This document shows positions 48,167 through 48,308 of a stretch of 64,000 nucleotides of DNA, in pieces. How positions within the stretch are numbered: position 1 is the first letter of the stretch; each line of letters starts with the position of its first letter. The position numbers and the translations under genes are program-made. The notes under the pieces were generated by a model. That model ran no database searches, was not told where the DNA came from, and saw only the letters and a program-made list of their open reading frames with translations. The DNA is from Chara braunii (taxonomy: Eukaryota; Plantae; Charophyceae), in the NCBI GenBank assembly GCA_003427395.1, contig BFEA01000003.1:9339840-9403839 (forward strand), in the 5' to 3' direction.

Positions 48167-48308
48167 TTAACACCTCTTCCTTCACTCTGCCTCTTTCCCA
48201 TAGCGTGCAAGTGGGCTGTTACGGCATACGGGGATGGGGGCAGCTCGCGCTCAACTTCATCGACGTGGCGAGCCTTGTACGTTAGAGGCACGGCGGAGGA
48301 GGCGTTAA
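48167..48308 (+). ncRNA. Conserved structured RNA element in the PLE 3' UTR (copy 2)
   Basis: About 80% identical over ~89 nt to 7060-7148, with compensatory base changes in several helices (details in findings). Confidence 0.6.

What the first reader, a model, noticed from the sequence alone, without database searches (positions are those of the whole stretch)
48167..48308. Unrecognised structured RNA with covarying helices and a pseudoknot-like pairing, conserved in the 3' UTR of two divergent PLE copies
SEEN: 48204-48291 and 7060-7148 differ at about 18 of 89 positions, while the flanking UTRs are unalignable by eye and the RING proteins are highly diverged. Most differences preserve pairing. 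Outer stem ACTCTGCCTC/GAGGCAC has the same C-C mismatch and different but complementary extensions. The next helix is TAGCGTGCAAG/CTTGTACGTTA. A small hairpin reads GCTG-tta-CGGC versus GCCT-tga-AGGC. A long hairpin (YACG..GATG..GGGC / GCTC-AA-..ATC..CGTG) has a loop hexamer complementary to the segment just 3' of the hairpin: GCTCGC(48243-48248)/GCGAGC(48268-48273) versus GCTGCC(7099-7104)/GGCAGC(7125-7130), a double compensatory change that is not CpG decay. KNOWLEDGE: PLEs typically carry hammerhead ribozymes, but I find no hammerhead, HDV, twister, pistol or SECIS core here. INFERENCE: candidates are a new self-cleaving or processing RNA, an RT-recognition signal, or a conformational switch or dimerisation element. 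The loop pairing looks sterically difficult at the same time as the full hairpin.
Basis: partly seen in the sequence, partly recalled or inferred. Interest (0 to 1): 0.85.

Follow-up and report, generated by a model that had tools for sequence, protein, structure and literature searches.

The report
Rewired twister-sister-like RNA in algal retroelement
A family of jumping genes in the stonewort alga Chara, reported to lack the usual self-cutting hammerhead RNA, carries in its 3' tail a strongly conserved 130-letter folded RNA that holds the catalytic letters of the rare twister-sister ribozyme in a new order; it may be a switchable self-cutting RNA, but cutting has not been shown.

Summary
The motif (48176-48302; second copy 7033-7160) lies in the 3' UTR of Chlamys-1_cBra-type Penelope-like elements of Chara braunii, which are reported to lack a hammerhead. 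I found 16 copies of about 7 subfamilies; cores are 74-91% identical while most flanks are near random. The outer stem, small hairpin and 6-bp loop pairing covary. Rfam gives no match. It fails TS membership: the block order differs, P2 is replaced by a pseudoknot, there is no junction, and GUGCAAG is paired in the consensus fold. The long hairpin and the loop pairing exclude each other and are close in energy, which suggests a switch. Poly(A) RNA-seq shows sense transcription without a cut, and no copy starts at the site; a validated PLE hammerhead also shows no cut in RNA-seq and needs protein. Best reading (0.45): a gated, non-circularly rearranged TS-like ribozyme. Main rival: a non-catalytic RT-binding switch. 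The scan had noted the element before, not the TS match.

The parts
48176..48302 (+). Whole conserved RNA motif, copy 2 (subfamily A), in the 3' UTR of a Chlamys-1_cBra copy
48176..48193 (+). Outer stem, 5' arm (about 16 bp with the 3' arm; 4 pairs with two-sided changes)
48285..48302 (+). Outer stem, 3' arm
48203..48211 (+). 5' strand of a 9-bp helix with 48274-48282 (mostly one-sided changes)
48205..48212 (+). GUGCAAGU, identical to twister-sister SL4 G29-U36; paired in the consensus fold
48215..48225 (+). Small hairpin, 3 bp plus 5-nt loop; all 3 pairs show a two-sided change
48227..48267 (+). Long hairpin: lower stem 48227-48230/48264-48267, 2x2 GG/AA loop, upper stem (P1-like) 48233-48239/48255-48261
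48240..48242 (+). Invariant GCA = twister-sister G5 C6 A7
48243..48248 (+). Loop hexamer, 5' strand of the covarying 6-bp pseudoknot or kissing helix (P2-like)
48249..48254 (+). Near-invariant GCUCAA = twister-sister G59-A63 plus A64 as in the lantern ribozymes; predicted scissile bond 48252^48253 (not shown to be cut)
   Evidence: no read ends there
48268..48273 (+). 3' strand of the 6-bp pseudoknot helix; preceded by U-G (48266-48267), the candidate stand-ins for TS A8 and G9
48274..48282 (+). Strand complementary to the SL4-like string (candidate anti-SL4 lock)
44619..48656 (+). Host element: broken, 5'-truncated Chlamys-1_cBra PLE (RT about 44611-45640, Josephin about 46572-46908, RING-like 47324-47782, 3' end near 48656)
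7033..7160 (+). Motif copy 1 (subfamily B): GUGCAAGU 7061-7068, GCA 7096-7098, hexamer 7099-7104, GCUCAA 7105-7110 (predicted cut 7108^7109), partner 7125-7130
6286..7338 (+). Host fragment of copy 1: RING-like end, 3' UTR and tail between (CA)n tracts

Best explanation
The RNA is a twister-sister-like self-cleaving ribozyme with rearranged connectivity, held mostly in an off fold, that occupies the 3'-UTR slot where other PLEs keep a hammerhead. SHOWN: conservation, the helices, the 6-bp loop pairing, identity of the invariant letters with the TS core, sense transcription. INFERRED: in the off fold the long hairpin forms fully and GUGCAAG is zipped to CUUGUAC. In the on fold the lower hairpin opens and an H-type pseudoknot forms: the upper stem is P1, G5/C6 pair non-canonically with A64/A63, U-G before the partner strand replace A8/G9, the 6-bp helix is P2, C62 flips out at the stem junction, and the freed GUGCAAGU docks as SL4. 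The cut is C^A at 48252^48253. The trigger is probably binding of the element's protein or pairing with a second copy in a tandem transcript; the purpose is probably to trim tandem precursor RNA or cut off the tail at a late step.
For: TS residues G5 C6 A7, G59 C60 U61 C62 A63 and G29-U36 (PMC5660989) and lantern GCUCAA (PMC11620745) are all present; GCA, GCUCAA and U36 are kept in 129 of 130 cells of 13 copies. GCA and GCUCAA sit directly on a stem, as on TS P1. Background chance of both strings in 135 nt is about 5e-6, with no joint case in 796 kb of Chara sequence, both strands counted. A8U keeps partial activity in TS and 0.8 in the lantern; A7 is non-conserved. Nested folds with either the long hairpin or the 6-bp helix differ by 0.4-4.4 kcal/mol in six of seven copies with an intact helix, and the seventh favours the 6-bp helix. 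The pseudoknot fits idealised geometry only if the lower stem opens. Chlamys-1_cBra is not among the Chlamys types reported with a hammerhead, and nearby hammerheads have their own upstream sequence. A validated PLE hammerhead cuts only with protein and leaves no read ends in RNA-seq (PMC11167929). Non-circular permutations exist for hammerheads and create pseudoknots (PMC10085705).
Against: No cleavage shown. Oligo-dT RNA-seq has continuous sense depth across the site and no start or end pile-up. None of 16 genomic copies starts at the predicted cut, whereas hammerhead-tail fragments often start near theirs. No match to Rfam even at E 10. GUGCAAG is paired in 92% of cells; opening it costs 7-11 kcal/mol in the nested model. 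The TS four-way junction, whose 2'-OH contacts are essential, is absent. A8 is missing after GCA, C37 is G, and the C12-G56 pair is inverted in subfamily A. The TS match was recognised after seeing the sequence.
Confidence: 0.45

Rival explanations
1. Non-catalytic cis element: a structured handle or two-state switch that the element's RT polyprotein binds to choose its own RNA and set the internal start of reverse transcription 100-350 nt downstream. The TS-like letters are a dead or borrowed ribozyme fold, or a protein-contact surface.
For: Reads span the site. Every copy whose tail could be read and is not next to an assembly gap carries the whole motif, and a short copy starts about 20 nt upstream of it. 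A PLE RT starts internally and needs an RNA segment near its start site, and hammerhead catalysis is dispensable for insertion in vitro. The SL4 string is paired in the consensus fold.
Against: The motif stays 74-91% identical while RT (63-74%) and RING (31-52%) diverge, which is little co-divergence for a protein-read site. It does not explain the exact TS strings and their position on a stem.
Confidence: 0.3
2. Dimerisation or circularisation element: each copy keeps all nested helices, and the loop hexamer pairs with the single-stranded partner of a second copy (tandem pLTR transcript or a second RNA), bridging the ends; a TS-like site, if any, forms only in the dimer.
For: In the consensus nested fold both hexamers are free, and their pairing in cis does not fit with the full hairpin. 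Tandem partial copies with two motifs occur (L006 36977 and 37811; L003). Minimal PLE hammerheads cleave as dimers (own knowledge, Lunse et al. 2017; not checked here).
Against: Covariation cannot tell cis from trans pairing. No data on oligomers. It leaves the SL4 match unexplained.
Confidence: 0.13
3. A ribozyme of a new class with a different active site or cut position; the TS strings are convergent or coincidental.
For: Further invariant unpaired letters with no TS counterpart (G after U36; the G and A of the 2x2 loop); the topology resembles a permuted pistol-like pseudoknot more than a TS junction (inference).
Against: The chance estimate for the TS strings; no cleavage signal anywhere in the stretch.
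Confidence: 0.1
4. Not a functional RNA: a conserved coding exon or recent sequence exchange between families.
For: A pyrimidine tract and AG precede copy 2.
Against: A 1-nt indel inside the core splits the subfamilies; no splice joints in RNA reads; in L120 the motif starts about 12 nt after the stop codon; changes are compensatory.
Confidence: 0.02

Closest known systems
Twister-sister ribozyme (Rfam family; structures 5Y87 and 5T5A; PMC5660989)
   Same: G5 C6 A7 and G59-A63 on a P1-like stem; SL4 G29-U36 identical; predicted C^A cut.
   Different: Order is SL4, GCA, GCUCAA instead of GCA, SL4, GCUCA (not a circular permutation); A8-G9 do not follow A7; P2 is a 6-bp pseudoknot helix; no three- or four-way junction; C37 is G; SL4 string paired in the consensus fold; eukaryotic retroelement context.
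[quoted passage not shown]
   Same: Six-letter strand GCUCAA identical; one lies in a retrotransposon UTR.
   Different: The lanterns need a five-letter GCNAG strand and two plain stems; here it is GCA(G) and a pseudoknot. The lanterns lack SL4 and most genomic homologues are inactive; this motif is under clear selection across subfamilies.
PLE hammerheads, such as the protein-assisted PAc hammerhead (PMC11167929; PMC8557442)
   Same: Sense strand, near the 3' end or pLTR, upstream of the RT start; no cut visible in RNA-seq.
   Different: No CUGANGA or GAAA core; unrelated fold.
Non-circularly permuted hammerheads, types SGC, CSG and GCS (PMC10085705)
   Same: Conserved catalytic blocks in an unexpected order, with pseudoknots in place of junctions.
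   Different: Those are hammerheads with proven cleavage; that study found none for twister and does not report a twister-sister search.
Chlamys-1_cBra (PMC8557442)
   Same: The host element: RT, Josephin and C/H-rich tail; its published alignment row closely matches the window's RT peptide.
   Different: The passages read describe no RNA motif for this type.

Membership tests
Twister sister | 3' strand of L1, G59 C60 U61 C62 A63 (U/A64), directly before the P1 3' strand | tested here: met
   GCUCAA at 48249-48254, 77 of 78 cells conserved, followed by the stem
Twister sister | 5' strand of L1, G5 C6 A7 A8 G9, directly after the P1 5' strand | tested here: not met
   GCA then G; one letter short of GCNAG. 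U-G at 48266-48267 could stand in (inference; A8U tolerated)
Twister sister | SL4 sequence G29-C37 | tested here: inconclusive
   8 of 9 letters identical, C37 is G
Twister sister | SL4 presented as the loop of hairpin P4 | tested here: not met
   No conserved closing hairpin; string paired with 48274-48282
Twister sister | Nested P2 leading to a three- or four-way junction; order L1 5', SL4, L1 3' or a circular permutation of it | tested here: not met
   P2-like helix is a pseudoknot; order is SL4, GCA, GCUCAA
Twister sister | Match to the Rfam covariance model | tested here: not met
   No hit at gathering score or at E up to 10
Twister sister | Divalent-ion-dependent self-cleavage at C^A | not testable with these tools
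   Indirect only: no read ends at the site
Lantern TS-like | GCNAG / GCUCAA internal loop between two nested stems | tested here: not met
   GCUCAA present; GCNAG and second nested stem absent. A C insertion giving GCCAG is seen in 5-6% of RNA reads of two runs
Hammerhead | CUGANGA and GAAA core | tested here: not met
   Absent from all aligned copies; no Rfam hit
HDV-like, twister, pistol, hatchet, hairpin | Family core and Rfam model | tested here: not met
   No Rfam hit at E up to 10; cores compared by eye from own knowledge
SECIS | AUGA/GA quartet with apical AA | tested here: not met
   No AUGA in the conserved core; no Rfam hit
Chlamys-1_cBra PLE (host element) | PLE RT followed by Josephin and a C/H-rich tail in C. 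braunii | tested here: met
Chlamys-1_cBra PLE (host element) | N-terminal GIY-YIG endonuclease | not tested
   The window copy is 5'-truncated

The most novel reading that the evidence does not exclude
The first non-circularly rearranged twister-sister ribozyme and the first one conserved by selection in a eukaryotic retroelement: its active site assembles at the junction of an H-type pseudoknot and is gated by a built-in anti-SL4 strand that the element's protein or a partner RNA releases. It would show that hammerhead-less Chlamys PLEs swapped ribozyme class rather than lost the ribozyme.
Probability: 0.4. Interest if true: 0.9.

Novelty: new variant of a known kind. Interest (0 to 1): 0.76.

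Why it matters
Twister sister is one of the rarest ribozyme classes and its two crystal structures disagree on the active site; a natural variant with different wiring would test which contacts matter. Non-circular permutations have so far been shown only for hammerheads. For PLE biology, the absence of hammerheads from most Naiad and Chlamys elements was read as a sign that ribozymes are dispensable passengers; a second ribozyme class in the same slot would argue that the function is needed and would prompt a topology-free search in the other hammerhead-less families. The prediction is cheap to test: one transcript, one bond. If it does not cut, it is still an uncatalogued, strongly conserved, pseudoknotted two-state RNA in a telomerase-related retroelement.

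Tried and rejected
Rfam at gathering score and at E up to 10: nothing relevant. Pattern scans of viral contigs (twice), metagenome contigs and prokaryotic genomes: 145 hits, none with a 6/6 loop pairing in those inspected and no credible model match (with output partly cut, 76, 77, 79, 86); they serve as a negative control, and the patterns would miss diverged relatives. More distant relatives (L001, L122: RT about 52%; L123: 42%) lack the motif with filters off; their UTRs may be incomplete. The first RING search found nothing. GCAAG of the SL4 string as the 5' L1 strand: rejected, both flanking pairs would be U-C. A P4 hairpin around UGCAAGU: possible only in subfamily A. An alternative helix ACGGGG/CCUUGU is complementary in most copies but breaks at its one variable pair in 7 of 13 and does not fit a coaxial TS fold. 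Minus-strand function: rejected because G-U pairs favour plus, most copies fold better on plus and transcripts are sense. I first thought the nearby type III hammerhead ended this element; an earlier scan note and one search showed that it has its own upstream sequence and inserts independently in (TA)n. A hammerhead-like pair of strings in L123 is not canonical and was dropped. Two copies have deletions across the predicted cut (a third is unclear), but loss of a hairpin tip explains them equally well. One search had the strand polarity reversed; one search replaces it.

Full report
Setting. The window is from Chara braunii: the RT piece at 45069-45638 is 93% identical to CBR_g21976 and hits other C. 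braunii models. Copy 2 of the motif lies about 390 nt after the end of a broken RT-Josephin-RING frame (Josephin E 1.5e-7; frames). This is the Chlamys-1_cBra type of Penelope-like element; the published alignment row closely matches the window peptide. Craig et al. report hammerheads for the second and third C. braunii types but not for this one (PMC8557442). Copy 1 lies in a RING-only fragment of a sister subfamily between (CA)n tracts.

The two copies align at 77% over 119 nt with no flanking hit. From Chara loci and one ENA metagenome contig I gathered 16 copies. Among seven subfamily representatives the 90-nt core is 74-91% identical, while most 100-nt flanks are 37-66% against 45-57% for shuffles. 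In L120 the RING peptide is 52% identical to copy 2, the UTR is gone (the motif starts about 12 nt after the stop), and the core is still 91% identical. RNAalifold recovers the nested fold on its own. With the loop pairing added, 91.6% of cells pair and 12 pairs show two-sided changes; slid controls give 37-51%. The loop pairing has four intact sequence forms. The small hairpin varies at all three pairs, and the outer stem at four. The helix GUGCAAG/CUUGUAC and the lower long-hairpin stem show mostly one-sided changes or none. The copies are related and partly decayed, so these counts are supportive, not a significance test.

No library match. Rfam returns nothing relevant even at E 10. Pattern scans of viral, metagenomic and prokaryotic collections gave only chance-like hits. 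More distant PLE relatives lack the motif in the stretch available. So far it is known only from Chara-type elements.

What the invariant letters are. The least variable unpaired positions are GCA on the 5' side of the long hairpin loop, GCUCAA on its 3' side, and the U of GUGCAAGU. In the four-way twister-sister structure the catalytic loop is G5 C6 A7 A8 G9 with G59 C60 U61 C62^A63 U64 on stem P1, and SL4 is G29 U30 G31 C32 A33 A34 G35 U36 C37 (PMC5660989). The human lantern ribozymes have GCUCAA exactly (PMC11620745). The motif thus holds the whole 3' catalytic strand, three letters of the 5' strand in the right place on a stem, and eight of nine SL4 letters. In 796 kb of other Chara sequence (both strands) the two features occur 17 and 10 times and never together, about 5e-6 per 135 nt. 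I noticed the match after seeing the sequence; allowing a hundredfold for classes, strands and choice of strings (my estimate) still leaves it below 1e-3. The predicted scissile bond is 48252^48253 (7108^7109 in copy 1).

Why it is not a member of that family. The blocks come in the order SL4, GCA, GCUCAA, which is not a circular permutation of the known order. A8 and G9 do not follow A7. Six loop letters join the two catalytic strands and pair with a strand 3' of the hairpin. There is no multi-way junction, although its 2'-OH contacts are essential in TS. The SL4 string is paired in the consensus fold.

How it could still work like one (inference). If the lower part of the long hairpin opens, the RNA forms an H-type pseudoknot: the upper stem plus the G5-A64 and C6-A63 pairs make stem 1; the 6-bp helix plus G-C60 and U-U61 pairs from the U-G just before the partner strand make stem 2; C62 is the flipped-out letter between them, as in the crystal. 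A8U keeps partial activity in TS and 0.8 in the lantern, and A7 is non-conserved. In idealised A-form geometry the link over stem 2 needs 10-12 A (two letters, so the first hexamer pair must fray), and the link over a 6-level stem 1 needs about 30 A (7-8 letters available); with the full upper stem it needs about 40 A with only 4 letters, which does not fit (helix constants from memory, polarity set by the known pseudoknot rule). Nearest-neighbour energies put the nested fold with the long hairpin and the nested fold with the 6-bp helix within 0.4-4.4 kcal/mol in six of seven copies with an intact helix; in subfamily C the second is better by 7.5. Freeing the SL4 string costs a further 7-11 kcal/mol, so the active fold would need help. 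The 6-bp pairing could equally form between two copies.

Evidence on cleavage. Three oligo-dT runs of one study put 241, 1413 and 329 reads on 48121-48368, about five to ten times more in the direction that means sense in most stranded libraries. Depth runs smoothly across the predicted site and no place shows many starts or ends. Reads come from many subfamilies and are laid at 80% likeness, so this speaks against efficient constitutive cleavage only; cleaving copies would also be depleted from such a pool. No genomic copy among 16 begins at A63, while fragments of a separate hammerhead element often begin near their cut. Against reading this as refutation: the Anolis PLE hammerhead cuts only when the element's protein is added, leaves no read ends in RNA-seq, and is not needed for insertion in vitro (PMC11167929).

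The nearby hammerhead. A type III hammerhead follows the tail of one copy (L124) and a piece of it follows another (L003). Its full form has its own upstream sequence, and most of its fragments sit in (TA)n away from any Chlamys-1 tail, so it belongs to a separate element, as an earlier scan note said. Chlamys-1 copies end at TGTGACAATATA or at (CA)n, 100-350 nt after the motif. The motif is therefore the only ribozyme-like structure seen in their 3' UTR.

Verdict. A real, uncatalogued, selected RNA structure. Most likely a gated twister-sister-like ribozyme with new wiring (0.45); otherwise a non-catalytic protein handle or switch (0.30), a dimerisation element (0.13) or a ribozyme of another kind (0.10). 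It works like TS by inference only and fails the membership test. Literature searches found no report of it, within the limits of the library. Earlier scan notes cover the host element, and one mentions structured RNA ends; the word twister occurs in none.

Noticed in passing
window 2499-2548 (+), unit about 2490-2590: Type III-like hammerhead core (CUGAUGA, 5-bp stem II, GAAAC) in a short (CA)n-flanked element that starts near its cut site; relatives in L005 27809 and L002 18525. Rfam misses it at gathering score.
   Followed up: partly
window 16643-16722; L124 56908-57035; L006 5649; L125 49, 283, 54601: Tail of a (TA)n-targeted hammerhead element with a loop I/loop II kissing pair; its 3' end resembles the 3' end of Chlamys-1 (TGACAATATA vs TGACGATATA), so it may use the same machinery.
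   Followed up: partly
window 48240 (RNA reads): A C insertion giving GCCAG, the OR4K15 lantern strand, in 5-6% of reads of two RNA runs and not in DNA contigs; perhaps one expressed copy with a canonical five-letter strand.
   Followed up: no
window 48248-48277 (loose read ends): Loose ends hint at further subfamilies, one with hexamer GCCAUC and a partner GGUGGC; the two ends could not be linked.
   Followed up: no
window 48306-48491: A 96-nt direct repeat around a single N at 48396, absent from other copies; probably an assembly overlap artefact.
   Followed up: partly
window 22123-22223 (-) and 43163-43233 (+): U6 snRNA copies (one near full length, one 3'-truncated); a further piece near 50514-50557.
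   Followed up: no
window 8009-8220: Fragment of organellar or bacterial-type SSU rRNA.
   Followed up: no
window 9854-11698 (+): Long frame with an AlkB-type 2OG-Fe(II) oxygenase domain (Pfam E 4.5e-36).
   Followed up: no
window 3354-3471, 8187-8301, 12340-12453, 13070-13179, 49564-49672, 49928-50040: A family of about 110-nt palindromic MITE-like repeats.
   Followed up: no
window 3134-3152: GTGCAAGTGGG also occurs as one arm of an unrelated inverted repeat (3052-3160); no other part of the motif follows.
   Followed up: partly
L123 5040-5110: GAAAC and CUGAUGA strings in the 3' UTR of a distant relative (RT 42%); stem II is not canonical and Rfam gives no hit.
   Followed up: partly
L005 13440-13946: A short subfamily C copy that starts about 20 nt upstream of the motif sits inverted, tail to tail, against a subfamily A copy across a (TA)n tract.
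   Followed up: partly
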